IMG/VR virus record: IMGVR_UViG_3300009011_000001
Coordinates: 62,001 to 126,000 of that record
Direction: 5' to 3' (one strand)
DNA length: 64,000 nt
Shown here: positions 6,619 through 24,120 of the stretch, in pieces
Position numbering within the stretch: position 1 is the stretch's first letter
Layout: each line of letters begins with the position of its first letter
Program-made: the position numbers and the translations under genes
The notes under the pieces: generated by a model
What the model was told of the DNA's origin: nothing
What the model saw: the letters and a program-made list of their open reading frames with translations, nothing else
Databases searched by the model: none

Positions 6619-6829
6619 ATATTTAGCACGCCTTGTATTTAATCACATGGTAGCGGTATCAGTTGAGCAGCCAATGGCGTGAGCCACTGGGTACCCGGAT
6701 GATGAGCTGGGGAACTTAAGCCCAAACGGATATGGCCGTATCCAGAGTGTTGGGAATTCCTGACGCGATAGGGAACCATTAAAGGCATTTCGCCACAATC
6801 GCAAACTGTGTACACACCAAGGAGTAAGC

Positions 6830-8791
6830 ATGTCTGACGATAATCTGTTCAAAGACGGTAACAACGACCAATCTCACGCAGGTACCGAACAACGTCAAAA
6901 CGAACGCACCACCCACGAATCTGCGCAACAACGCTACGAACAGCCAGCACCATCGGCCTGGACTCTGGCTGATCTGGGTAACGTCCAAGGTCGTCCAAGC
7001 CTTGGCGGTCTGACCGACGGCGCTCTGTCGCTGATGATCGAAACCTTCGAAGAAGCCAAGGACCGTGCAAGCGGCCGTGTTCCCGAAGAAATCAGCTCCA
7101 AGCGCTTCAAAGCTCTGCCGCTGGTTGGCCAGCGCATCGGTAGTCAGATGTCGGCTCTGCTGATCGCTCTGCCTGCGACCATCGCCAACAAGCTGTACGC
7201 AATCGTCTACATCGCTCTGATCGAACCGGCTGGCCCGATGGCTACCCGTTCTCTGTCCGACGGCCAAGGCACTTACGAAGCTCTGTACCTGCCGGAAGAC
7301 CGCCTGACCGAGAAATACGTGAAGGCCATCCGTGACGAAGTGTCGGCCAACATCCCAGGCGCGCAAATCGTTATCGCCGGTCGTCAAGTGATCACCCAGG
7401 GCACCGTTGCTGCGCTGAACGAAAAAGAAGGCGTGGGCATCATCGAGCGCATCTTCGACAACGGCTTCGACGCAATCTGCGGCTACCGCCAGAACATGAT
7501 CGATGCCATCACCGGTCAGCGTACCAGCGATCGTCGCATCAACCCGGACGCCGTCGGTCGCCGTGACCGTCTGGAAGCCAGCTTCGACTTCTCCGGTGCC
7601 CAGCCTCTGGACACCTCGGGTCTGCCGATCGCTTCCGACGCCGCAATGACCATCTGGTACTCGGCCGCCGACCAGGACGAAGAAGGTAACTACAACCGTA
7701 TTCCTCTGGCCGAAGCGCGCATGTCGCTGAACCTGTTCCTGGATCAAAGCACCAAGCAAAACACCCTCGGCTTCGGCCGTCGTCGTGATCGCAACAAAGA
7801 TGACCCGGCTCCGTTCCAAGCGGTGCTGACCATCAACAACGTGACCTCGCCGCAAGGTGTTCCGTTCTCCCTGGAACTGGCGCAGCTGACCATCGCAGCT
7901 ACCGCAATCCTGTCGAACGACTACCGCTGGGCTGAAATCCTGCGTCCGCGCGCTACCATGCCTTCCGGCCTGAAGCCTGCGTACAACATCAAAGACCTCG
8001 TGCATTTCGCCGACGTCACCGATGAGCAGCGTGAAAAGATCCTGCAAGCCGTTACTCCGAACATCAGCGACGCCGACCTGTCGAACTACCTGGACCTGGT
8101 CGTTCAACCGCAAATCGCTTTCGCAATCGTGGCTCCAAGCTCCTGCGAGAAATCGTGGGTTCTGTCGATCTACGAGAAGATCGCAATGGCGAAGAACGAT
8201 GCCGAGCGCCGTGCTCTGACCACCACCCTGTACGACAGCGCCGACGTCGTGACCGGCAAGCGCTTCCGTAAGGTTCTGCGCGAACTGGGCGGCGACGACA
8301 GCACTCCACCAGTTGTTCTGACCGGCAACCCGACTCTGGTCGGTACCTGGGTCGACTCCGACGGTCGCGAGCGCGCTCTGAGCGAAATTCAGAACGTGCC
8401 TGCGGTCCTGAGCCGTGTCGGCGCGAAAGGTCTGGAGCTGGTTGAAGACTTCCAGTTCACCATCCAGGACGATCGTCGTCCGGTTCCGGCCAACTTGGCG
8501 GACCGCTTCGGCATGTTGAACAAGTCCTTCGGTTCGATCCACGTTGTGACCACTGCAGAACAAGTCGGCCTGGTGCCGATCTACCTGCAAGCGCTGAACA
8601 TCTCCCTGCAACAGGCCAACATGACCTGCGTACCGACTTCCCTGGAAGGTACTCAGACTCGTCGTCGTCCTGCTTCGGGCGGTTACGGCGGCCTGGCCAC
8701 CAACGATATCGGCGCCACTCGCCGTCAAGGTTCCGGCTTGTCCGGCCTGAACACCCGTGGCAACGATCCGTTCGGCGGTCGCTACTTCTAA
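6830..8791 (+). CDS. chmA: Chimallin, the major phage nuclear shell protein (phiKZ gp54/PhuN-like)
   Basis: 653 aa, strong codon bias, AAGGAG RBS, low-complexity N and C termini, located between the gp52-like gene and the nvRNAP beta' gene. Confidence 0.85.
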   Translation: MSDDNLFKDGNNDQSHAGTEQRQNERTTHESAQQRYEQPAPSAWTLADLGNVQGRPSLGGLTDGALSLMIETFEEAKDRASGRVPEEISSKRFKALPLVGQRIGSQMSALLIALPATIANKLYAIVYIALIEPAGPMATRSLSDGQGTYEALYLPEDRLTEKYVKAIRDEVSANIPGAQIVIAGRQVITQGTVAALNEKEGVGIIERIFDNGFDAICGYRQNMIDAITGQRTSDRRINPDAVGRRDRLEASFDFSGAQPLDTSGLPIASDAAMTIWYSAADQDEEGNYNRIPLAEARMSLNLFLDQSTKQNTLGFGRRRDRNKDDPAPFQAVLTINNVTSPQGVPFSLELAQLTIAATAILSNDYRWAEILRPRATMPSGLKPAYNIKDLVHFADVTDEQREKILQAVTPNISDADLSNYLDLVVQPQIAFAIVAPSSCEKSWVLSIYEKIAMAKNDAERRALTTTLYDSADVVTGKRFRKVLRELGGDDSTPPVVLTGNPTLVGTWVDSDGRERALSEIQNVPAVLSRVGAKGLELVEDFQFTIQDDRRPVPANLADRFGMLNKSFGSIHVVTTAEQVGLVPIYLQALNISLQQANMTCVPTSLEGTQTRRRPASGGYGGLATNDIGATRRQGSGLSGLNTRGNDPFGGRYF

Positions 8792-15968: not shown

Positions 15969-16754
15969 ATGTCGGACCAAAAACAAGGCTGGACTCCCAC
16001 GGTAATGGATGAGCGAAAGCTCAAACTCCACGGCGAACATGCTCTGGTGGAGGGCGGGTTCAAACCTGAGTTCGCCATCAAGTGGATTCAGAAAACCAAC
16101 GCCTTCTCCATCAAGGTCAACACCGGCACCAAGACCGAGAAAGGTTATCCGATCGTTATCGAGACCGCCATCGACTGCCTGTCGTTGATGGAACTGATGG
16201 AACTGATCGACACCATCTCCAAAGCGCCGGGCGCCGTGTCCTTCGAAATGGACAACTGGGGCCAGCCGTTCATCTACAGCAAGGAGCAGGGCAAGTCCAT
16301 CCGCAGTCCGGACATCCTGAACGTTTCTCGCTTCCAGATCGCCAAGCGCGAAGACGGCTCCATGGTTCTGTCCGTGGCCGCCAAGGGCAAGAAAGAACTC
16401 GAGTTCGAATTCAAGGGCAGCGACTTCCACCGTATCCAGAAACAGGGCGAAGCGAACAAGGCCATGGCCTCGCGTATCGCAGCTCAGACCTGGGCCGGCT
16501 TCTGGAAGAAGTTTGCTTTCGAGAAGTACACCAAGGACTGGGCAGAAACCGAGTACGACAAGAACAAGCGTATCGAGCGCATGAACAAAGCCAACAACAA
16601 TGGCGGCGGTCAGCGTAACTACAACAGCAATAGCGGTGGTGGCAGCAATAACAACTACCAGCAGCGTCCTCAGCAACAAGCTCCTCAGCAAAGTGCTCCT
16701 GCACCGGCGTCGCAGCCATTCGAAGACAGCTTCGATGACGACGTTCCGTTCTAA
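15969..16754 (+). CDS. chmC: ChmC-like nucleus-associated single-stranded nucleic-acid/RNA-binding protein (gp67-like)
   Basis: Globular N-terminus, N/G/Q-rich disordered C-terminus, SSB-like tip DSFDDDVPF; lies immediately upstream of the gp68 and picA homologues. Confidence 0.7.
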   Translation: MSDQKQGWTPTVMDERKLKLHGEHALVEGGFKPEFAIKWIQKTNAFSIKVNTGTKTEKGYPIVIETAIDCLSLMELMELIDTISKAPGAVSFEMDNWGQPFIYSKEQGKSIRSPDILNVSRFQIAKREDGSMVLSVAAKGKKELEFEFKGSDFHRIQKQGEANKAMASRIAAQTWAGFWKKFAFEKYTKDWAETEYDKNKRIERMNKANNNGGGQRNYNSNSGGGSNNNYQQRPQQQAPQQSAPAPASQPFEDSFDDDVPF

Positions 16755-16912: not shown

Positions 16913-18493
16913 ATGGAGTTAAGAATTGCAACTTACACAGTTCGAAGCTTTTCGATTGTGGAAGCGAGGCATGGGGATGAGCCGGAACTTGTGTTCAATA
17001 CGGCAGGCTACACATCCACAAAGCCCGGCGCAATTAAGCGTGACGACGACAGCGAACTCGGCACCAAGATCGAGCTCTTTGAAGAAATCAACGCCCTGAT
17101 TGCAAGCCTTGATCAGAAATCGCAGGACGCATTGTTCGAGGAGTACGCTCGTCTGGACAGTACGTTGACCAGTTTCCATGTTATCGGATCGACTGGCATC
17201 TCTGCGATGAAACAACTGAAAGAAAACCTGTCGGCGATCATCAAAGCGATCTACGACATCATTCCTTTCAGCGCTTTCCGCGACTACATCGTTAACAGCC
17301 CGCACATTCGACTGCCCATCGAGTTGGCGGACACCTACGTCACCACAGACAAAGTAACACCGCTGTATAAAGAGCGGACTTACCTTCGCCCTGAGTACAT
17401 CGATCTCAATGCGTATGCATTGGCTCTGCGGCTGATGATCCCAATCTGGGGCGGCTATCTCCCGATCGCCGAAACCGAGCATGGGAAGATGAAAGAGTAC
17501 GACGCGTTCAAGCTGCTCTACGGTTCTGCCTTAATGAAGACGCCGGTGTTCGATCGGTTGGAGCGTTATCTGGCAGCAAACCTCGACGCAAGCAAGTACG
17601 AGTTGTCGGTGGTCTCGAAGTTCTTGTCGGCAGACGAAGTCCCAGGGTTCCTTGCAGCGTTTGCATTGATCCGGAAAGTCAGCGTCGCGCCATTGTCGGC
17701 TGTGTCTGATAAAGACCACCTGATGAAGATCATCTATAACTACGTTATCGGTGACAAGAACCGCATCCCTCCAGCGTTCGCGAGCAACATCCGCGATAAG
17801 AAACCTGACGACTCCTCGTCTGAAGGTAACGAAAGCGTCTGGGGTATCTTCAAGATGAAAGCAAAGATCTCCACCGGGGACTTGTGCATCATTGAAGAAT
17901 ACATCGAGAAGTACACCCGAGCCGCCAAGAAGATTGCGCCGACTCTGTCCGATGAACGAATCGAGCTGTGTGTTCAGAACGCTCTGACTCTGCACGACTT
18001 CGATCCGACCTACGGCCAAGAGTGGCTGGTGATGCAAGTGTGTTCTACGATCATCGTGGGTACAGCCATCGAGTTGATGGATCGCACACCTGGGCTTATT
18101 GCAGCAGGTATTGTTCAAGCGGTATTGTGGGAATGGGAACTGCCGCAACTGGCTATTCTGACCACGGCCCGTATCGCCAAACTTAAAGAAGGAGAAATCA
18201 TTCAACCGATGCGGCGCTTACCCATTGCGCCTGCTTTGCTAGAACAGTTTGATGTGATCTACCCGTACCGGACGCCCGAGCCGAAACGTGGCGATCCGAT
18301 CCAGTCAACCAACACCGGTGTCATCGATGTTGAGAAGCATGCCGCACACTTCTATCGCCACGACTGGGTTCCGCAATGCCCGACTGAACTTGCCAAGAGC
18401 TACTATCGTTCCGACAAGACCCGACGGATCGAAGTCACCGGTGACCTTAACAGTCAGCTTGGTGAAATGCTGGTCAAGATCAACAACTTCTAA
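16913..18493 (+). CDS. nvRNAP promoter-specificity (sigma-like) subunit, gp68-like
   Basis: 526 aa; size and position between chmC and picA. Confidence 0.75.
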   Translation: MELRIATYTVRSFSIVEARHGDEPELVFNTAGYTSTKPGAIKRDDDSELGTKIELFEEINALIASLDQKSQDALFEEYARLDSTLTSFHVIGSTGISAMKQLKENLSAIIKAIYDIIPFSAFRDYIVNSPHIRLPIELADTYVTTDKVTPLYKERTYLRPEYIDLNAYALALRLMIPIWGGYLPIAETEHGKMKEYDAFKLLYGSALMKTPVFDRLERYLAANLDASKYELSVVSKFLSADEVPGFLAAFALIRKVSVAPLSAVSDKDHLMKIIYNYVIGDKNRIPPAFASNIRDKKPDDSSSEGNESVWGIFKMKAKISTGDLCIIEEYIEKYTRAAKKIAPTLSDERIELCVQNALTLHDFDPTYGQEWLVMQVCSTIIVGTAIELMDRTPGLIAAGIVQAVLWEWELPQLAILTTARIAKLKEGEIIQPMRRLPIAPALLEQFDVIYPYRTPEPKRGDPIQSTNTGVIDVEKHAAHFYRHDWVPQCPTELAKSYYRSDKTRRIEVTGDLNSQLGEMLVKINNF

Positions 18494-18519: not shown

Positions 18520-20172
18520 ATGCGTCTTCTTAAACTAAACTTCGTCGAAGCTCCACCGATGGCCGATCAGTACATTCGGTCATTCGATTTCGATATGAAG
18601 AATAGCCGGATTGACGATCTGGCAAGGCTGACCGAAGACGGTACAAACATCCTTCCTGAACGACTCGCCAAAGTCAGTTCTTCGCTGATGTCCCCAACGA
18701 CCCAACGTCGTGAGAAGATCGTTTCTCAGATCGATAAGGGCTGGGGGCAGCGCCGGATCATGTTCTCGATGGTGGTTGAAACATCCAGCCGTCCAAACCA
18801 TCAGACGTACGAATACATCGTTGGCCATACCGACCACGATGGCTTCTCGATGCTCGGCATGAAGGAAGTGAAGCTCGACAACCGGATGAAGCTGTACTTC
18901 GACCAGATCACCCACATTAACCTGTCGGGCGGTATGCGTCGTAATCAAGAAATCTGGACTCCGTCCATCAAGGCCAGTGACTTGGTCTTGAACCGTGACA
19001 CGCTGCGTGGGTTTGGCCACGACGACCTAGCTAGCCATGGCGGTCACCGCCCACTCACCAAGCGCCCAACGGATCTCTTCCGCCGCGAAGGCGCAGAGCT
19101 GAACTACAACGAAAGCAACTTCAGCCTAGACAGCGATAGCAACGATCGCCGTTCGGAAACCCACACCAACAATACTGTTGGTACGTTCACAAGCACGTTG
19201 AAGCTTTCCAGTCGCGATAACAATAGCCCAACCTCGTTCCTTCATCGGACCCTGGATGGCTACGTTACGGCATCTACCGGCCTGGGCCTGGGCGCTGATT
19301 CCAGCCCGTACGGTTTGCCAGACGAACGTCAGAACAAGCTGAGTAATCTGAAGCGTGCCTACGGCACTGTGGATGAAAACGATCCATCAGCTGACCGCTA
19401 CATCGAAGAGCTCAAGGAGAATACCCGGATCCTCAACACCGGTTACATCACCTACGGCGAACTTATGGAGATGAACCCAGAGTTCGTCAAGAGCGCTCAA
19501 GAAGACTTCGCCTTCGCAGATCCAAAGAAAAGCTATCGCCATGGCGACATGGGGATGTGGCGCGGTGACGACAACGAAACCATTGCAGCGTTCCAGATTG
19601 CTTGCTCGCTTCCGGGCCTGATGATCAAGAACATGTACTCGAAGATCGATGGGTTCACCATCAACTCCTACGGGCACAGCAAACTGCAGCGGATCACTGG
19701 CGGTATCACCAGCCCGTACATCGAAGGTATCGATACTTCTGCCACATGGCCGAACTTCGAACACCAGGTATCTGAAATCATGATCCACGAAGTCACTCGT
19801 GGGGCATTCAACTTCGAGGCCAAGATCGATGCAAACGTTGACGGTTTCGTCGACATCTGGATCCGCATCGACGGTGGTCCTGAATCCTTCCACAGCTTCC
19901 CGGCATATTGCGCAGGCACTGTGGCTCCGACTCTGGATACCGACGTGACTTCGCTGAGCCGCATGAGCCGGAACATGACTTCGATCTCGAACAGCTTGGC
20001 TGACAGCCGTCTGAATCGTAGTCGAATCAGTCTCGGTGAGCTTAACCGCAATGAAGAAGGCGGTATCAAGCTTGGTATTGGCGGTAACTTCCGCCGCGAA
20101 AACAATGATCTTTTCGGTAACACCGACGATCTTCCGTCCAGTCTCGCACTTCCTTCGAAGAAGAACTGGTAA
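18520..20172 (+). CDS. picA: PicA/Imp1-like phage-nucleus protein import factor (gp69-like)
   Basis: 550 aa; follows the gp68-like gene in the conserved block; GWGQRRIMF segment; synteny-based. Confidence 0.7.
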   Translation: MRLLKLNFVEAPPMADQYIRSFDFDMKNSRIDDLARLTEDGTNILPERLAKVSSSLMSPTTQRREKIVSQIDKGWGQRRIMFSMVVETSSRPNHQTYEYIVGHTDHDGFSMLGMKEVKLDNRMKLYFDQITHINLSGGMRRNQEIWTPSIKASDLVLNRDTLRGFGHDDLASHGGHRPLTKRPTDLFRREGAELNYNESNFSLDSDSNDRRSETHTNNTVGTFTSTLKLSSRDNNSPTSFLHRTLDGYVTASTGLGLGADSSPYGLPDERQNKLSNLKRAYGTVDENDPSADRYIEELKENTRILNTGYITYGELMEMNPEFVKSAQEDFAFADPKKSYRHGDMGMWRGDDNETIAAFQIACSLPGLMIKNMYSKIDGFTINSYGHSKLQRITGGITSPYIEGIDTSATWPNFEHQVSEIMIHEVTRGAFNFEAKIDANVDGFVDIWIRIDGGPESFHSFPAYCAGTVAPTLDTDVTSLSRMSRNMTSISNSLADSRLNRSRISLGELNRNEEGGIKLGIGGNFRRENNDLFGNTDDLPSSLALPSKKNW

Positions 20173-20198
20173 CTTTCACCCACGAGGGGTAACAATGA

Positions 20199-21488
20199 AT
20201 GTCAACGAAACTCGACAGTCTACTTGATTTCTATCTGAAGCTGTTGTTGGACGTCGGTGTGTTCGACAAAGATGGCAAAGGGCTGTTGTCCTACGATCAT
20301 GGCGGAACTCCTCATCCGGTATCGCTGGCCGGCACGCGTCTGTGCCTGCCGACCCGCGAGATCGTTCGTGACGGCGAATGGACTGCCCGTACGGCATTCC
20401 ACCCAATGTCTGAGCAGATCAACCAGGGCCCATCGCCGGTACTGAATGCACTCAAGGCGTATATCGTCGAGCGCATTCGTCCGGTGTACAAACTGATCGC
20501 GTTGGAGCTGGCTGAGCTGGTGGCTGATCATAGCCGCCACAAAGGCCTGTCCACCAAAGCGGCCAAGTTCATGAAGCCGCTAGTTGGTTTCGACGACACC
20601 ACGACCAAAGCTCTGGAAAAGGTTTTCAAGCGCACCAGCACTGAAATCCCTGAAAAGCGCCTGGTCAGCATCTTCCTGCAAAGCGGTGGCGGTAATGGCG
20701 TCCTGCGCAGCTGCAGCGTTTCCTTCCCGCTGATGGATGACGCCGACAACGAAGACACCACCACGTTCTTCGAAGTCAACATGCCGCGCAAGACCAAGGA
20801 CAAAGGGCTGATCGTAGCTCTCCTGAAATACGTTCTGGGCGAAGCTTCGGATTTCACCGGTGAAGTCAAGACCGGCGATGCGCCGTACTTTGAAAGCCTG
20901 CTGATCAGCTTCCGCAAGATTGCTGAGCATCTGAACGGTCTGATCGATCTGCACAGCCCGGCATGCCCGGTGTTGAAAGACTTCCGCTTCCATCTCGAAT
21001 GGATGGATGTGCTGGATAAGTTCGGCGAGTTCTGCGAGAAGTACGGTGTAGCGGTTCCGGCATTGCCGGGTAATGTGGGTATCGATCCAGAGCCAGAAGA
21101 TGAAGAAGAAACGCCAACCCGCTCGGTCTTCGAAAGCACAGCAGACCAAGTCGGTTCGCTGGACCTCCCGTTCAGCAAAGACGGCGAAGAGCGTAGCGGC
21201 ACTGGCGGTTCTCTTTATCGCAGTAGTGCTGCCCATACTCGCGATCGCGATCAAGGTGATCGTGGCCTGGATTCTGGCAGATCTGATAGCAGCAGCTTGA
21301 GCATCTCCGACATCCTGCGTGATCGTGGCAGTCGTGATCGTGATAGCGGCCTTGATCGCCGTCCGTCTCGTGACAGCCGTGACAACCGCGATCTGTTCTC
21401 CCGTCGGGATGAAGAGCGTGGCGGTATTCGCCTGGGTGGCGATAACGGTCTGGGCGGTTTGGGCCGCGGTGGCGGTAAGCGCTGGTAA
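20199..21488 (+). CDS. Conserved core protein (gp70-like) with R/D/G-rich disordered tail
   Basis: 429 aa; LCLPT...FHPMSE...GPSPV segment; syntenic position. Confidence 0.75.
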   Translation: MSTKLDSLLDFYLKLLLDVGVFDKDGKGLLSYDHGGTPHPVSLAGTRLCLPTREIVRDGEWTARTAFHPMSEQINQGPSPVLNALKAYIVERIRPVYKLIALELAELVADHSRHKGLSTKAAKFMKPLVGFDDTTTKALEKVFKRTSTEIPEKRLVSIFLQSGGGNGVLRSCSVSFPLMDDADNEDTTTFFEVNMPRKTKDKGLIVALLKYVLGEASDFTGEVKTGDAPYFESLLISFRKIAEHLNGLIDLHSPACPVLKDFRFHLEWMDVLDKFGEFCEKYGVAVPALPGNVGIDPEPEDEEETPTRSVFESTADQVGSLDLPFSKDGEERSGTGGSLYRSSAAHTRDRDQGDRGLDSGRSDSSSLSISDILRDRGSRDRDSGLDRRPSRDSRDNRDLFSRRDEERGGIRLGGDNGLGGLGRGGGKRW

Positions 21489-21490
21489 AC

Positions 21491-21533
21491 GGCATAAAGA
21501 GGTGGGGGCAACCCCACCTCTCTTGCTCTTTTT
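21491..21533. terminator. CATA-hairpin(GCAA) terminator between convergent genes
   Basis: agaggtgggg-gcaa-ccccacctct followed by a T-rich tail. Confidence 0.8.
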
Positions 21534-21873
21534 AATTTGCCGTTAGACGAGTTCGATAAACCATCTTCATCCTGGCAACTAGATCTTTGTCTGGAATTAG
21601 CAAGGTCCCGATGTTCTCGTTGATTTCGTGCATGGAGTTAATTCCGTTCACACGCATAATCAATTGGTGGTCTTCAAGCTCAACTCCCTGTTCCAGTAAG
21701 TACCCGGCCAGGTCAAACTGAAACAGAAACCCTTCCTCTGGCGCAACGGCAACAGCGCGCGTAGCAGGGTGGGTTCTGAAAAACGTAACCAGTGACTCGA
21801 TGTAAGTGTTGTAATCGCGAGTTGTTGTGTATTCGTCAGGGCTCTCAATACGAAGATTGTCCAGCGCGCTCAT
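21532..21873 (-). CDS. Small protein, possible LysM/gpX/T4 gp53-like baseplate component
   Basis: 113 aa; GAGG RBS; LIMRVNGI...LLIPD pattern. Confidence 0.6.
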   Translation of the reverse strand: MSALDNLRIESPDEYTTTRDYNTYIESLVTFFRTHPATRAVAVAPEEGFLFQFDLAGYLLEQGVELEDHQLIMRVNGINSMHEINENIGTLLIPDKDLVARMKMVYRTRLTAN

Positions 21874-21930: not shown

Positions 21931-24120
21931 ATGGAGTTGCAAATGTCGGATCCGCGATTTCCGATTCACCCTGAGTATGTTTCATTTAACGGGATGAACT
22001 CGTATTTCAAAAACGTGTCACCCGTTCGACAAGTGATGCACACCGGCGCTATGTCCCAAGCGCTGATCGTAGATGGCCGCACCCGTAAGCGTCAGCAATC
22101 GGGTCTGGAACGAGAAATTGCCCGAGGAGCTCTAAACCACACGTTCCGAAACGACGTGATCATTCGAGCCGTAATCCCACGCTTTACTGATGACATGTTC
22201 AGCCACCTTCCCAATGGCCGAACTGCAAACCCGCTCGATCTGGTGATCTTTGAAGATTACCGTACCGAGCAGCTGGACGTCATGGAGCTTTCTAAGTTCC
22301 ACGTCATGCACCAGCACTTTGGTTTCGTGTTCGACATCGACGAAGACATCTATAACCGGATGGCCAACGTCAAAGATGTCATGATTCCAGCAGGCACTTG
22401 TGTGGCTCGCTCTCCGGCCGTTACGCCGGATGGTGACTACATGCCCGGACTCGAAACCAACGTTGTGATGCTGTCTCACCCGGCAACGGATAACGACAGT
22501 ATCATTTTCTCTGAGTCCTACGCGTCAAAGCGTATCCGTTCCAACGCCTTCGAATCTCGTGGGCTGGAATGTGGCCGGCACAAATATCCGATTAACGCTT
22601 ACGGCAATGGCTCGATCTTCAAGCCAATGCCCGATGTAGGCGAGATCATTCATAGCAACGGTCTGCTGATTGCGACTCGTCCTTACGACGAACGCCTCGA
22701 TGCGGTCTACATGACGCGCAAGCAGTTGCTCAAGCCGATCTATTGGCTGGATGATCGAATCGTTGGCCACGCAGGTGCTGAGATTGTTGACATCGAAGTG
22801 ATGCACAACAGTCATCTTGCAAGTCAGCGCTTGCCGGAAGAAATGTCAAGACAGTTCCGCAAGTACTACGACGCCGATCGCCGCTTCTATACGGAGCTGA
22901 TCCGCAATACGGTATTCCGTAGCGGGCGTTGGAATGACAACGTGAACATGTCTGACCGTCTGGCTACTCTGGTCACCATGGCAATCCCTCGTGCCGGTCA
23001 CATGCTGGTCGAAGAGGGAATGTGGCCGAAGAACCAGGCTGATGAACTGGACGTGCGTCTGAACTATCGTGGCGATCTGCTCGATGAGTGGAAGGTGAAA
23101 CTTACCTACCGCTATAAGACAGAAGCAGGCGAGGGTCCAAAGGCTACGGACGAAAACGGCGCTAAAGGCGTTGCATCGTTTGTAATGCCAGACGCCGACA
23201 TGCCGGTCGATGCATTCGGTAACCGTGCTGAGATTGCTGTACTCAGTAACCCGACTGTAAACCGGATGAACCCTGGTCGTCCTCACCAGCAAATGATCGG
23301 CGCTGCCGGTCGTGATGTAATCAAACGTGTTCGCCGCACCTACGGTCTGCCGTCGATGGGCGAAGTCACGAGAGAAGGGGCTGAGCGTGCTGTTTACGAC
23401 AAAGCCAATGCTGAACTGAACTTTAAGAACTTCGCGTACATCGTTGGGTTCTACAAGATCGTCAGCAAAGATCGGATGTACATGTTGGCAACTCGCGATG
23501 ACGTCATCTCTACTGGACGCTATCTGCGACATCTCGTCGAAGTCATTCTTGACGGCAACGGCGAGCATGCTTACGGCATGTACATTCAGAAGGTCCCTGA
23601 GAGCGAAGATAAGCTCGATGAGATCATTGATGCGCTGTACTCTGGCGATTACCGCCCTGAGATGAGCCCGGTTACCTTCCGCGATTACAGCGGCAAAATG
23701 GTGACCACCAAGGAAGATGTGCTGATCGGACCGATCTACCACCTCATCCTGGAAAAGACTGCTACCGATGGCTCTGGCGTGAGTTCTGCGAAGCTTAACC
23801 ACTTCGGCATTACTTCGCGTCTGACCAATGCCGACAAGCACTCAACCGCTGGTCGTCAAACGGTGACTCGTTCTCTCGACGAGGCATCCATCCGGAGCAT
23901 GGCAGCGGCATCTGGCGCTGAAGTCATGGCGCACATCGTTGACCTGCACAACAACCCAGTGGTGCACAAAGCGGTGTGTCGCAACATCATTACGGCCGAT
24001 AAGCCTACCGACATCGATGAACTCGTTGACCGGTCGGTCTTTAAGCTGGGTGGCCACCGGCCGCTTGCGTTTGCAATCAACCAGTTCATTTGCTCAGGCA
24101 AGTTCATCACTCACGACTAA
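21931..24120 (+). CDS. Non-virion RNA polymerase beta-like C-terminal subunit (gp71-73-like, uninterrupted)
   Basis: GPKATDENGAKGV, DMPVD, NRMNPG and IGPIYHLILEK beta-subunit motifs; start may be 21943. Confidence 0.9.
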   Translation: MELQMSDPRFPIHPEYVSFNGMNSYFKNVSPVRQVMHTGAMSQALIVDGRTRKRQQSGLEREIARGALNHTFRNDVIIRAVIPRFTDDMFSHLPNGRTANPLDLVIFEDYRTEQLDVMELSKFHVMHQHFGFVFDIDEDIYNRMANVKDVMIPAGTCVARSPAVTPDGDYMPGLETNVVMLSHPATDNDSIIFSESYASKRIRSNAFESRGLECGRHKYPINAYGNGSIFKPMPDVGEIIHSNGLLIATRPYDERLDAVYMTRKQLLKPIYWLDDRIVGHAGAEIVDIEVMHNSHLASQRLPEEMSRQFRKYYDADRRFYTELIRNTVFRSGRWNDNVNMSDRLATLVTMAIPRAGHMLVEEGMWPKNQADELDVRLNYRGDLLDEWKVKLTYRYKTEAGEGPKATDENGAKGVASFVMPDADMPVDAFGNRAEIAVLSNPTVNRMNPGRPHQQMIGAAGRDVIKRVRRTYGLPSMGEVTREGAERAVYDKANAELNFKNFAYIVGFYKIVSKDRMYMLATRDDVISTGRYLRHLVEVILDGNGEHAYGMYIQKVPESEDKLDEIIDALYSGDYRPEMSPVTFRDYSGKMVTTKEDVLIGPIYHLILEKTATDGSGVSSAKLNHFGITSRLTNADKHSTAGRQTVTRSLDEASIRSMAAASGAEVMAHIVDLHNNPVVHKAVCRNIITADKPTDIDELVDRSVFKLGGHRPLAFAINQFICSGKFITHD

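What the first reader, a model, noticed from the sequence alone, without database searches (positions are those of the whole stretch)
20010..21488. PicA-like and gp70-like proteins share short motifs in their disordered C-terminal tails
Seen: the PicA-like tail has ISLGEL, NEEGGIKLG, NNDLFG and ends KKNW*. The adjacent gp70-like tail has LSISDIL, NRDLFS, DEERGGIRLG and ends GKRW*. The folded regions show no evident similarity, and ChmA ends with NDPFGGRYF*. Inference: these may be shared short linear motifs for shell or pore targeting or for condensate formation, and the R/D/G-rich tail might act like an FG-type barrier. This would make the gp70-like protein a candidate import-machinery partner.
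Basis: inference. Interest (0 to 1): 0.6.

Follow-up and report, generated by a model that had tools for sequence, protein, structure and literature searches.

The report
Shared docking motifs in two phage-nucleus tails
Two neighbouring proteins of a nucleus-forming jumbo phage, the import factor PicA and the shell-associated gp70-like protein, carry floppy C-terminal tails with the same short conserved motifs and the same final tryptophan, which suggests that both plug into one common site on the phage nucleus shell.

Summary
The window lies in a complete 248.6-kb chimallivirus genome. ORF 18520-20172 is a PicA/Imp1 (phiKZ gp69) orthologue. ORF 20199-21488 is a phiKZ gp70 / PhiPA3 gp64 orthologue. 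Both sit in the conserved ChmC-gp68-PicA-gp70-nvRNAP block. The folded parts are unrelated (hhalign probability 0.06%), and both tails are predicted disordered.

Within this one genome the resemblance is only marginal (shuffle p 0.013-0.08). Orthologues make it convincing for three of the four pairs:
- **Terminal W:** 12/12 PicA-like and 47/54 gp70-like relatives.
- **GI(K/R)LG and (N/R)D(L/P)F:** held in both proteins across orthologue pairs of at least about 59% (gp70) or 55% (PicA) identity.
- **ISLGEL/LSISDIL:** not supported as shared. LSISDIL is an old SLiM (short linear motif) specific to gp70.

Other lineages show the same behaviour with different motifs: GNS[LI]L in Machinavirus, and both proteins ending GLGL[LV] in phiKZ-like phages.

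My best reading is that the tails dock both proteins on one shell hub. That is inferred. A ChmA plus gp70-tail fold gave only weak support (0.40 against 0.00). The FG-barrier idea fails. A direct PicA-gp70 complex is contradicted by a published negative pull-down. The proteins are known; the shared, clade-varying tail code appears undescribed.

The parts
18520..20172 (+). PicA/Imp1-like protein (550 aa), orthologue of phiKZ gp69
   Evidence: PHROG 3141, E 9e-57 over residues 1-497. tblastn to PHIKZ069 gives 23% identity, E 6e-18, 87% coverage. Synteny matches the other phages examined.
20020..20169 (+). PicA-like disordered C-terminal tail (about residues 501-550)
   Evidence: It lies beyond the PHROG match. 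pLDDT is 32-43 in a model that is poor overall. Conserved islands are visible in the orthologue alignment.
20059..20085 (+). PicA motif GGIKLGIGG (residues 514-522)
   Evidence: Kept as G[GR][ILV].L[GNS] in PicA orthologues down to 36% identity. A similar AGIRLGTG occurs in the phage Huxley PicA tail.
20101..20118 (+). PicA motif NNDLFG (residues 528-533)
   Evidence: Kept in P0056-P0060 and P0062. Absent in the L001/L002/P0061 lineage and in P0063.
20149..20169 (+). PicA C-terminal tip LPSKKNW, ending in an invariant W
   Evidence: W550 is invariant in 12/12 orthologues at 36-100% identity.
20199..21488 (+). gp70-like protein (429 aa), orthologue of phiKZ gp70 / PhiPA3 gp64
   Evidence: PHROG 3520, E 9e-56 over residues 7-308. 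tblastn to PHIKZ070 gives 28% identity, E 1e-22; to PhiPA3 064, 30% identity, E 1e-25.
20199..21083 (+). gp70-like folded N-terminal domain (residues 1-295), with no known fold match
   Evidence: AlphaFold2 pLDDT is about 90. Foldseek against the PDB finds nothing below E 0.2. The best VIA-align Z is 5.5, within noise. There is no PDB sequence match.
21090..21485 (+). gp70-like disordered tail (residues 298-429), an R/D/G/S-rich polyampholyte
   Evidence: pLDDT is below 50 for nearly all of 298-429. Composition of residues 306-429: R22, G21, S20, D18 of 124.
21156..21176 (+). gp70 motif SLDLPFS (residues 320-326), the [VI]D[LV]P[WF] element at the start of the tail
   Evidence: Conserved as DLPF or DLPW/DVPW through most of the clade. 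It resembles the PicA end SLALPSKKN (ungapped score 32).
21297..21317 (+). gp70 motif LSISDIL (residues 367-373), an old SLiM specific to gp70
   Evidence: Found in 48 of 54 clade members. The PSSM also hits gp70 tails of phiKZ, PhiPA3, 201phi2-1, Psa21, RTH11, DT01, Huxley and Eowyn (p 0.002-0.04). It does not hit PicA tails in general.
21384..21401 (+). gp70 motif NRDLFS (residues 396-401)
   Evidence: Kept as RD[LP]F[SQ]R in P0001-P0007 (RGLFDR in P0008). Appears as SPFSRD / NPFRRD in P0009, P0010, P0016 and P0021.
21420..21440 (+). gp70 motif GGIRLGG (residues 408-414)
   Evidence: Kept as GI[RQ]LG in P0001-P0008 (59% identity or more) and absent in more distant relatives.
21474..21485 (+). 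gp70 C-terminal tip GKRW
   Evidence: The last residue is W in 47 of 54 family members. W429 is conserved in at least 90% of alignment A2.
6830..8791 (+). ChmA (chimallin, 653 aa). The N-terminal tip MSDDNLFKD (6830-6856) and the CTS2-equivalent end NDPFGGRYF (8762-8788) carry the same D-[LP]-F element.
   Evidence: Relatives carry Pfam PF25677. The alignment shows both termini conserved. A genome-wide motif scan finds this element in terminal segments only in ChmA (twice), PicA and gp70.
15969..16754 (+). ChmC/Imp6 (gp67)-like protein. Context gene, the known direct partner of Imp1 in phiKZ.
   Evidence: Synteny with PHIKZ067 and 201phi2-1 gp123. The tail is G/N/Q-rich with an acidic aromatic tip.
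16913..18493 (+). gp68-like nvRNAP subunit. Context gene.
   Evidence: PHROG 3209, E 2e-84. Synteny with PHIKZ068.

Best explanation
**What the genes are (shown).** They are the PicA/Imp1 and gp70/gp64 orthologues of a previously unisolated chimallivirus.

**What the tails are (shown).** Each protein ends in a disordered tail that evolves fast except at a few short islands. In this lineage three islands are of the same kind in both tails:
- G-I-(K/R)-L-G
- (N/R)-D-(L/P)-F
- a basic-x-Trp carboxy terminus

They lie in a different order in the two tails, have no DNA-level repeat behind them, and are kept across orthologue pairs.

**What they most likely do (inferred).**
- The islands are docking peptides read by one common surface, so both proteins are tethered by flexible leashes to the same place on the nuclear shell.
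- The likeliest receptor is the chimallin lattice. It is itself held together by N- and C-terminal peptides that dock on neighbouring protomers. Its own N-terminal tip and CTS2 end carry the same D-(L/P)-F element here.
- A minor shell hub is the alternative receptor. ChmB in the phiKZ-like clade would be an example; no ChmB homologue was detected in this genome.
- The very tip co-varies by lineage: W/W here and GLGL[LV] in both proteins in phiKZ-like phages. This fits a co-evolving pocket.
- The long polyampholyte spacer of gp70 probably adds reach, and possibly multivalent or RNA-dependent clustering.
For: **Identity and synteny:**

**Disorder:**

**Conservation in orthologue pairs.** Pairs are assigned by shared contig length, and adjacency was seen directly in the fetched loci. 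Terminal W is 12/12 and 47/54, and gp70 motif columns score 0.76 against 0.42.

**No gene conversion:**

**Independent lineages.**
- In Machinavirus, GNSLL occurs in both Huxley tails and GNSIL in both Caitlin tails. The proteins are about 62-64% identical between the two phages. The Huxley tails give Smith-Waterman z=3.8.
- In the phiKZ-like clade both proteins end [LMF]G[LI][LVI].
- With one representative for each of 16 clades, the last 3-5 residues of PicA and gp70 match better than permuted pairs (median p 0.013-0.035).

**ChmA link.**
- The D-[LP]-F element sits in the ChmA N-terminal tip and in CTS2.
- CTS2 is a docking peptide in solved chimallin lattices (PMC9365700).
- The ChmA(45-605) plus gp70 tail(355-429) fold scored 0.40 against a best control of 0.00. 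The tool's verdict was 'weak support'. That mark was reached by 58/80 solved and 2/110 mismatched pairs, but a score of 0.60 or less was seen in only 7 of the 80 solved complexes and in both mismatches that passed. Partner pLDDT was at least 36 and the runs agreed in at least 21% of contacts.

**Experiments on orthologues.** PhiPA3 gp63 and gp64 are shell-localised and appear in ChmB pull-downs. The ChmC tail is needed for shell binding in PhiPA3.
Against: - No binding has been measured, and the fold result lies in the band the tool itself calls more often wrong than right.
- In this genome alone the similarity is marginal (p 0.013-0.08).
- ChmA never ends in W in this clade, so the shared tip does not copy ChmA's tip.
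- Many lineages (RAY, AH06, SA002, pEa37, Proteus10, PCH45, Eowyn) have no PicA tail at all, and about ten of 16 clades have non-matching tips. The tails therefore cannot be the universal way PicA reaches the shell.
- NDLFG was lost from PicA in one sublineage.
- phiKZ gp70 was reported as nuclear rather than shell-bound.
- Antisense oligomers against PHIKZ070 have no effect score listed.
- The covariation rests on few independent events.
Confidence: 0.45

Rival explanations
1. **Coincidence of composition.** Two fast-evolving, G/R/D/N-rich disordered tails happen to share a few short words that have no common function.
For: - Single-genome statistics are marginal (p=0.08, 0.04 and 0.013).
- The motif order is swapped.
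- One of the four pairs fails the test.
- NDLFG is lost in one PicA lineage.
- PicA motif columns are only slightly more conserved than the rest of the tail (0.53 against 0.44).
Against: - Terminal W is 12/12 and 47/54, although W is otherwise 0-0.6% of these tails.
- GI+LG is kept in both proteins across orthologue pairs while the surrounding tail diverges.
- GGI[KR]LG occurs in only these two of 298 ORFs.
- The same behaviour appears with different motifs in Machinavirus and in phiKZ-like phages.
- The clade-level permutation gives p of about 0.01-0.03.
Confidence: 0.15
2. **Direct PicA-gp70 complex.** The tails mediate binding of gp70 to PicA, making gp70 a subunit of the import machine.
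For: - The genes are adjacent in every chimallivirus examined.
- Both proteins are shell-localised and both are recovered with ChmB in PhiPA3.
- The phiKZ transposon screen shows almost no insertions in orf70 (1 site, against 0 in orf67-69).
Against: - phiKZ gp70-FLAG did not co-purify with His-Imp1 in either direction, whereas gp67 did.
- The import-escape selections reported in that preprint did not list gp70 among the genes hit.
- Like motifs point to a shared reader rather than to mutual binding.
- Many phages keep the gp70 tail but have no PicA tail.
Confidence: 0.12
3. **Condensate or selective-phase role.** The low-complexity tails, above all the gp70 polyampholyte, drive multivalent clustering with RNA or ChmC at the shell. 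The motifs act as stickers rather than as lock-and-key peptides.
For: - The gp70 tail is 120-300 residues and low-complexity in every clade, while its composition changes from R/D-rich to Q/M/P/G-rich.
- The neighbouring ChmC forms condensates with RNA through its disordered tail in vitro.
- The window's gp70 tail has R22/D18 of 124 residues.
Against: - It is not FG-like: few aromatic residues and no FG repeats.
- A position-specific invariant carboxy-terminal W and sharply bounded islands fit specific docking better than diffuse stickers.
- The PicA tail is only about 50 residues long.
Confidence: 0.2
4. **Shared terminal signal read by something other than the shell.** For example, a basic-x-Trp tip that anchors both proteins to a membrane such as the early infection vesicle, or a C-terminal stability or degradation signal tuned to the host.
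For: - Basic residues followed by a terminal Trp (KKNW, GKRW) resemble interfacial membrane anchors. This rests on general knowledge and was not tested.
- The tips vary by clade and so possibly by host.
Against: - No amphipathic helix is predicted in either tail.
- No data place either protein on membranes.
- Phages of the same host genus differ in their tips (Erwinia phages RAY, Huxley, PhiEaH1).
Confidence: 0.08

Closest known systems
PicA / Imp1 (phiKZ gp69, PhiPA3 gp63), the protein importer of chimalliviruses
   Same: - Sequence family: PHROG 3141, with tblastn to PHIKZ069.
- Position between the gp68-like nvRNAP subunit and gp70, and co-encoded with ChmA.
   Different: - Only 23-29% identical to any isolated phage.
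- Carries a roughly 50-residue tail ending in W with GI+LG and NDLF islands. Many characterised relatives have a different tail (phiKZ, PhiPA3) or none (RAY, PCH45).
- The papers read here describe cargo-recognition surfaces, not the tail.
phiKZ gp70 / PhiPA3 gp64, an uncharacterised nuclear-shell-associated core protein
   Same: - Sequence family: PHROG 3520.
- Same gene position.
- Folded domain of about 300 residues plus a long low-complexity tail.
   Different: - The tail is R/D/G/S-rich and ends in W here. It is Q/M/P/G-rich and ends in GLGL[LV] or GRLL in PhiPA3 and phiKZ.
- Function is unknown in all cases. The published localisation differs: nuclear in phiKZ and shell in PhiPA3.
Chimallin (ChmA) NTS/CTS1/CTS2 tail-in-groove lattice contacts (Laughlin et al. 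2022, PMC9365700)
   Same: - A flexible linker carries a short terminal peptide that docks on a neighbouring folded domain.
- The CTS2 equivalent in this phage ends NDPFGGRYF and shares the D-[LP]-F element and an aromatic carboxy terminus with the two tails.
   Different: - Whether PicA or gp70 peptides use ChmA grooves is untested. The fold gave only weak support.
- The ChmA tip is YF/YY, never W.
ChmC/Imp6 (phiKZ gp67, PhiPA3 gp61) disordered C-terminal region
   Same: It is encoded in the same gene block, and its disordered tail is required for shell binding and condensate formation in PhiPA3.
   Different: - Different composition: N/G/Q-rich followed by an acidic tip ending in P-[FW].
- Its tip is conserved across all clades examined rather than varying by clade.
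T4 gp45 clamp-binding C-terminal peptides shared by gp43, gp33 and gp55 (own knowledge; analogy only)
   Same: Unrelated proteins of one phage share a short hydrophobic C-terminal peptide because they dock on one hub.
   Different: - No homology, and no clamp partner is implied.
- Cited only as a precedent for the logic 'shared tip means shared receptor'.

Membership tests
PicA/Imp1 (phiKZ gp69) family | Sequence homology to phiKZ gp69 over the folded region | tested here: met
   PHROG 3141, E 9e-57 over residues 1-497. tblastn to PHIKZ069 gives E 6e-18 with 87% coverage.
PicA/Imp1 (phiKZ gp69) family | Conserved position in the ChmC-gp68-PicA-gp70-nvRNAP block of a ChmA-encoding genome | tested here: met
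   Same gene order in 30 phage records and in the metagenomic loci. ChmA lies at 6830-8791.
PicA/Imp1 (phiKZ gp69) family | Required for selective protein import, and forms puncta on the shell | not testable with these tools
   Known only from experiments on phiKZ, PhiPA3 and Goslar.
phiKZ gp70 / PhiPA3 gp64 family | Sequence homology of the N-terminal domain | tested here: met
   PHROG 3520, E 9e-56. tblastn to PHIKZ070 gives E 1e-22 and to PhiPA3 064 gives E 1e-25.
phiKZ gp70 / PhiPA3 gp64 family | Long low-complexity C-terminal tail after a domain of about 300 residues | tested here: met
   pLDDT is below 50 for nearly all of 298-429. A comparable tail is present in all 31 phage pairs compared.
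phiKZ gp70 / PhiPA3 gp64 family | Association with the nuclear shell during infection | not testable with these tools
   Shown for PhiPA3 gp64. phiKZ gp70 was reported as nuclear.
Short linear motifs (SLiMs) in disordered regions | Short islands of conservation inside a predicted disordered, otherwise fast-diverging segment | tested here: met
   gp70 motif columns score 0.76 against 0.42. PicA scores 0.53 against 0.44, which is weaker.
FG-nucleoporin-like selective barrier | Many FG (or similar aromatic) repeats spaced along a long disordered region | tested here: not met
   The gp70 tail has 3 F, 1 W and 1 Y in 124 residues and no FG dipeptide. The PicA tail has a single FG.
ChmA CTS2-like lattice-docking peptide | Terminal peptide resembling this phage's own CTS2 | tested here: inconclusive
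   The D-[LP]-F element is shared. The tip is not: W against YF/YY. The spacing from that element to the end also differs.
ChmA CTS2-like lattice-docking peptide | Binds the folded ChmA core | tested here: inconclusive
   Complex prediction scored 0.40 against a best control of 0.00, with the verdict 'weak support'. Partner pLDDT was at least 36 and contact agreement at least 21%.
ChmB-dependent shell hub (phiKZ gp2 family) | A ChmB homologue is present in the genome | tested here: not met
   No match in the window's own complete genome at E<=1. Matches were found in PhiPA3, HPP-Temi, 201phi2-1 and Psa21.

The most novel reading that the evidence does not exclude
Accessory proteins of the phage nucleus are plugged into the chimallin shell by a lineage-specific 'tail code'. 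PicA and gp70 carry interchangeable docking peptides that occupy the same grooves or hub used by ChmA's own tails, or by ChmB in phiKZ-like phages. The peptides here are a basic-x-W tip, GI+LG and D-L-F; in phiKZ-like phages the tip is GLGL[LV]. This would place gp70 physically at the PicA transport site. It would also give a simple sequence rule for predicting, and re-targeting, which proteins sit on the shell.
Probability: 0.25. Interest if true: 0.75.

Novelty: new variant of a known kind. Interest (0 to 1): 0.5.

Why it matters
How PicA and the other minor shell proteins attach to the chimallin lattice is not explained in the papers read here. No linear targeting signal has been reported for the phage nucleus.

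A shared tail code that varies by clade would give a concrete handle that can be mutated: the last residue, or two 5-6-residue islands. It could be used to test how import and export machinery is anchored. It could also show whether gp70, a core and apparently near-essential gene of unknown function, works at the same site as PicA. Finally, it would show whether ChmA's own tail-docking grooves double as receptors for accessory proteins.

If the tails prove dispensable, the finding reduces to a curiosity of parallel evolution in disordered regions.

Tried and rejected
- **Nucleotide search against isolated phages:** no match. Relatives had to be found at the protein level.
- **Whole-tail Smith-Waterman, matched against mismatched phages:** only a modest shift (mean z 0.84 against 0.25; naive p=0.004, not corrected for phylogeny).
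- **Naive permutation of C-terminal tips over 31 phages:** gave p<1e-4 but is inflated by relatedness. It was replaced by one representative per clade.
- **Recent duplication or gene conversion of tail DNA:** rejected. No repeats were found and synonymous sites differ. The exception is Caitlin, where 14 of 15 bases of GNSIL are shared.
- **Paralogy of the two proteins:** rejected.
- **Terminal W as a copy of the ChmA tip:** rejected.
- **ISLGEL/LSISDIL as a shared motif:** rejected.
- **GI+LG as a shared motif outside the close subclade:** not significant.
- **Fold of the gp70 domain:** no credible PDB match by Foldseek, VIA-align or sequence profile. PicA also has no PDB match.
- **Searching the window's ChmA protein in other phage records:** failed through divergence. 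Pfam PF25677 found ChmA in four of the five records, but not in Huxley.
- **Whole-record search of four metagenomic contigs:** not possible. Their ChmA genes were reached through a neighbouring gene instead.
- **ChmA plus gp70-tail fold:** weak support only. It is cited with its controls and not used as proof.


Full report
**What is there.**
The window is part of a complete virus record: 248,574 bp, 52% G+C, with direct terminal repeats. It has no close isolated relative at the DNA level.
- ORF 18520-20172 (550 aa) matches PHROG 3141 over residues 1-497. By tblastn it matches PHIKZ069, which is PicA/Imp1, at 23-29% identity.
- ORF 20199-21488 (429 aa) matches PHROG 3520 over residues 7-308. 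It also matches PHIKZ070 and PhiPA3 gp064.
- The surrounding order is SbcD, gp66-like, ChmC/gp67-like, gp68-like, PicA, gp70, a small reverse gene, then the nvRNAP beta subunits. This order is the same in all 30 phage records and in the metagenomic loci inspected.
- ChmA is at 6830-8791, and its relatives carry Pfam PF25677.

**Checking the observation.**
- The folded parts of the two proteins are unrelated (hhalign probability 0.06%).
- AlphaFold2 with a 51-sequence alignment gives a confident gp70 domain at 1-295 and pLDDT below 50 for nearly all of 298-429.
- The PicA model is poor overall because only 12 sequences were available. Its last roughly 50 residues are also low and lie beyond the family profile.
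- The order of the N.DLF and GGI+LG elements is swapped between the tails. The match is therefore not one collinear alignment.

**Is it more than chance?**
In this genome alone, only marginally:
- Smith-Waterman against composition-preserving shuffles gives p=0.08.
- The three best ungapped matches in any order give p=0.013, and the best single match gives p=0.04.
- GGI[KR]LG occurs in just these two of 298 ORFs, and six of the 298 end in W.
- No DNA repeat links the tails, and synonymous positions differ. The likeness is therefore kept at the peptide level.

**Orthologues.**
Word-based protein searches returned 55 gp70-like proteins (30-100% identity) and 12 PicA-like proteins (36-100% identity). 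Several pairs could be matched by contig, and two IMG/VR loci lie at 74% identity.
- *Tip:* the last residue is W in 12/12 PicA-like and 47/54 gp70-like proteins. W is 0% and 0.6% of the rest of those tails.
- *GI+LG:* PicA keeps G[GR][ILV].L[GNS] down to 36% identity. gp70 keeps GI[RQ]LG only in P0001-P0008, at 59% identity or more. A PSSM built from the PicA motif is significant only in the gp70 tails of P0001-P0006.
- *D-L/P-F:* the motif is kept in PicA P0056-P0060 and P0062 but lost in the L001/L002/P0061 lineage. In gp70 it reads RD[LP]F[SQ]R in P0001-P0007 (RGLFDR in P0008), and SPFSRD-like in some more distant members.
- *ISLGEL/LSISDIL:* this pair is not shared. LSISDIL belongs to an ancient gp70 motif, roughly [GK].S[LMIVW].[DE][FLIM][LM]. 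It is found in 48 of 54 clade members and also in phiKZ, PhiPA3, 201phi2-1, Psa21, RTH11, DT01, Huxley and Eowyn. PicA tails do not score beyond p=0.04 (window) and 0.12 (L001).
- *Island contrast:* in gp70 tails the motif columns show 0.76 pairwise identity against 0.42 elsewhere. In PicA the contrast is small, 0.53 against 0.44.

**Other lineages.**
Across 31 PicA/gp70 pairs:
- The phiKZ-like Pseudomonas clade has both proteins ending [LMF]G[LI][LVI]. Examples are PhiPA3 LGLL/LGLL, HPP-Temi LGLV/LGLV and 201phi2-1 LGLL/MGLI.
- RTH11 ends GSL/GAL, FLC9 ends WKL/YRL, and DT01 ends KFKF/RRRY.
- In Machinavirus, Huxley has GNSLL in both tails and Caitlin has GNSIL in both, at about 62-64% protein identity between the two phages.
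- Many enterobacterial phages have no PicA tail at all, and about ten of 16 clades have non-matching tips.

With one representative per clade, chosen from a gp70 tree, the last 3-5 residues match better than permuted pairs (median p 0.013-0.035). This is suggestive, but it rests on few independent events.

**Relation to ChmA.**
In solved chimallin lattices the last ten residues (CTS2), CTS1 and an N-terminal segment dock on neighbouring protomers (PMC9365700). In this clade:
- ChmA's CTS2 equivalent reads DPFGGRYF, NPLGDSYF, SFFND.., GLFGDAY or RPYSG..YY.
- Its N-terminal tip reads MSDD.LF.D.
- A genome-wide scan for [DN][DNR]D?[LP]F[GSKNQ] gives eight hits. The four that lie in terminal tail segments are the ChmA N-terminal tip, ChmA CTS2, the PicA tail and the gp70 tail.
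- ChmA never ends in W, so the shared tip is not a copy of ChmA's.

A fold of ChmA 45-605 with gp70 355-429 scored 0.40 (runs 0.29, 0.40, 0.42), against 0.00 for all three controls. The tool's verdict was 'weak support'. Its calibration was 58/80 solved and 2/110 mismatched pairs reaching the mark, but only 7 of the 80 solved complexes, and both mismatches that passed, scored 0.60 or less. Partner pLDDT was at least 36 and contact agreement at least 21%. I treat this as a lead only.

**Relation to ChmB.**
PhiPA3 gp63 and gp64 were both recovered with GFP-ChmB. Homologues of phiKZ gp2 (ChmB) were detected in PhiPA3, HPP-Temi, 201phi2-1 and Psa21. None was detected in this genome, Noxifer, RTH11, FLC9, DT01, Huxley or RAY. 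The GLGL[LV] tip thus roughly tracks ChmB. This suggests, but does not show, that the receptor of the tip differs between clades.

**Literature.**
- PhiPA3 gp61 (ChmC), gp63 (PicA) and gp64 are early, shell-localised proteins proposed to serve transport (PMC10643120).
- ChmC's disordered tail drives condensates, and its removal abolishes shell binding in PhiPA3.
- phiKZ Imp1 binds gp67 but not gp70 in co-expression pull-downs, and gp70 is listed there as a nuclear protein.
- Import signals are surface patches, not terminal peptides.
- The phiKZ transposon data show 0 insertions in orf67-69 and one site in orf70.
- Antisense oligomers against PicA score +++, while those against PHIKZ070 have no score listed.
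- None of the papers read mentions the tails of PicA or gp70. The published Nature version of the Imp1 study was not in the library.

**Interpretation.**
- *Shown:* the two tails are disordered. They carry conserved islands, three of which are of the same type in both proteins in this lineage. Analogous sharing recurs with other motifs elsewhere.
- *Inferred:* the islands are docking peptides for one common receptor on the shell. ChmA grooves are the leading candidate here.
- *Rejected:* the FG-barrier idea fails on composition.
- *Open:* a condensate role for the gp70 spacer remains possible and is compatible with docking.
- *Contradicted:* a direct PicA-gp70 complex is contradicted by the phiKZ pull-down.

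**Verdict.**
The genes are new members of known families. The shared, clade-varying tail code appears undescribed and is readily testable, but its function is unproven.

Noticed in passing
window 15969-16754 (+); also L001 1418-2194, L003 1463-2203, L035 7469-8263 and others: The ChmC/Imp6 (gp67)-like protein ends in a G/N/Q-rich linker followed by an acidic tip closing in P-[FW] or similar. Examples are FEDSFDDDVPF here, FDEDMPSF in phiKZ, and FDNDIPW and FDSDIPF in others. The tip is conserved in almost every clade examined. From my own knowledge it resembles the C-terminal tip of bacterial SSB (DDDIPF). The published work describes the region only as N/G-rich plus S/D/E-rich.
   Followed up: partly
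window 6830-6859 (+), ChmA residues 1-10: The ChmA N-terminal tip MSDDNLFKD is conserved (acidic residues followed by [LF]F) across 16 ChmA relatives of 33-89% identity. This holds although the roughly 40 residues that follow are hypervariable. The published 201phi2-1 work found the N-terminal tail dispensable for incorporation into the shell.
   Followed up: partly
window 21156-21176 (+), gp70 residues 320-326; relatives P0009-P0040: The gp70 tail begins with a conserved [VI]D[LV]P[WF] element: DLPF here and DLPW/DVPW in most relatives. Similar LPW elements occur in Noxifer, Psa21 and PhiPA3. This is a further gp70 SLiM of unknown role.
   Followed up: partly
window 21532-21873 (-): A small gene (113 aa, PHROG 3455) lies on the opposite strand directly after gp70. 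The same gene is present in the same place and orientation in nearly all the phage records inspected. In phiKZ it is PHIKZ070.01, which has no transposon insertions in one published table. Its function is unknown.
   Followed up: no
L035 17534-20089 and L038 17703-20258, against L036 17579-19099 and L040 17230-18747: The gene downstream of the second nvRNAP subunit is 851 aa with a LAGLIDADG_3 hit in two relatives, but about 505 aa without it in others. This probably reflects an inserted homing endonuclease or intein.
   Followed up: no
window 6779-8728 (-): A 649-aa open frame runs antisense across nearly the whole ChmA gene. Similar long antisense frames lie over other genes, for example 22846-23841 (-). 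They are probably a by-product of codon composition rather than real genes.
   Followed up: no
gp70 tails of RAY, AH06, pEa37, SA002, Proteus10 (L018, L016, L019, L023, L027): In the clade whose PicA has no tail, the gp70 tail is Q/P/M-rich and ends in a conserved aromatic-then-basic tip: FQFQPR, MFQFGR, PFTFVR, FQFVQGR, GMKFR. Several other clades end in aromatic residues followed by R or RR: FFR, YYRR, WRR.
   Followed up: no
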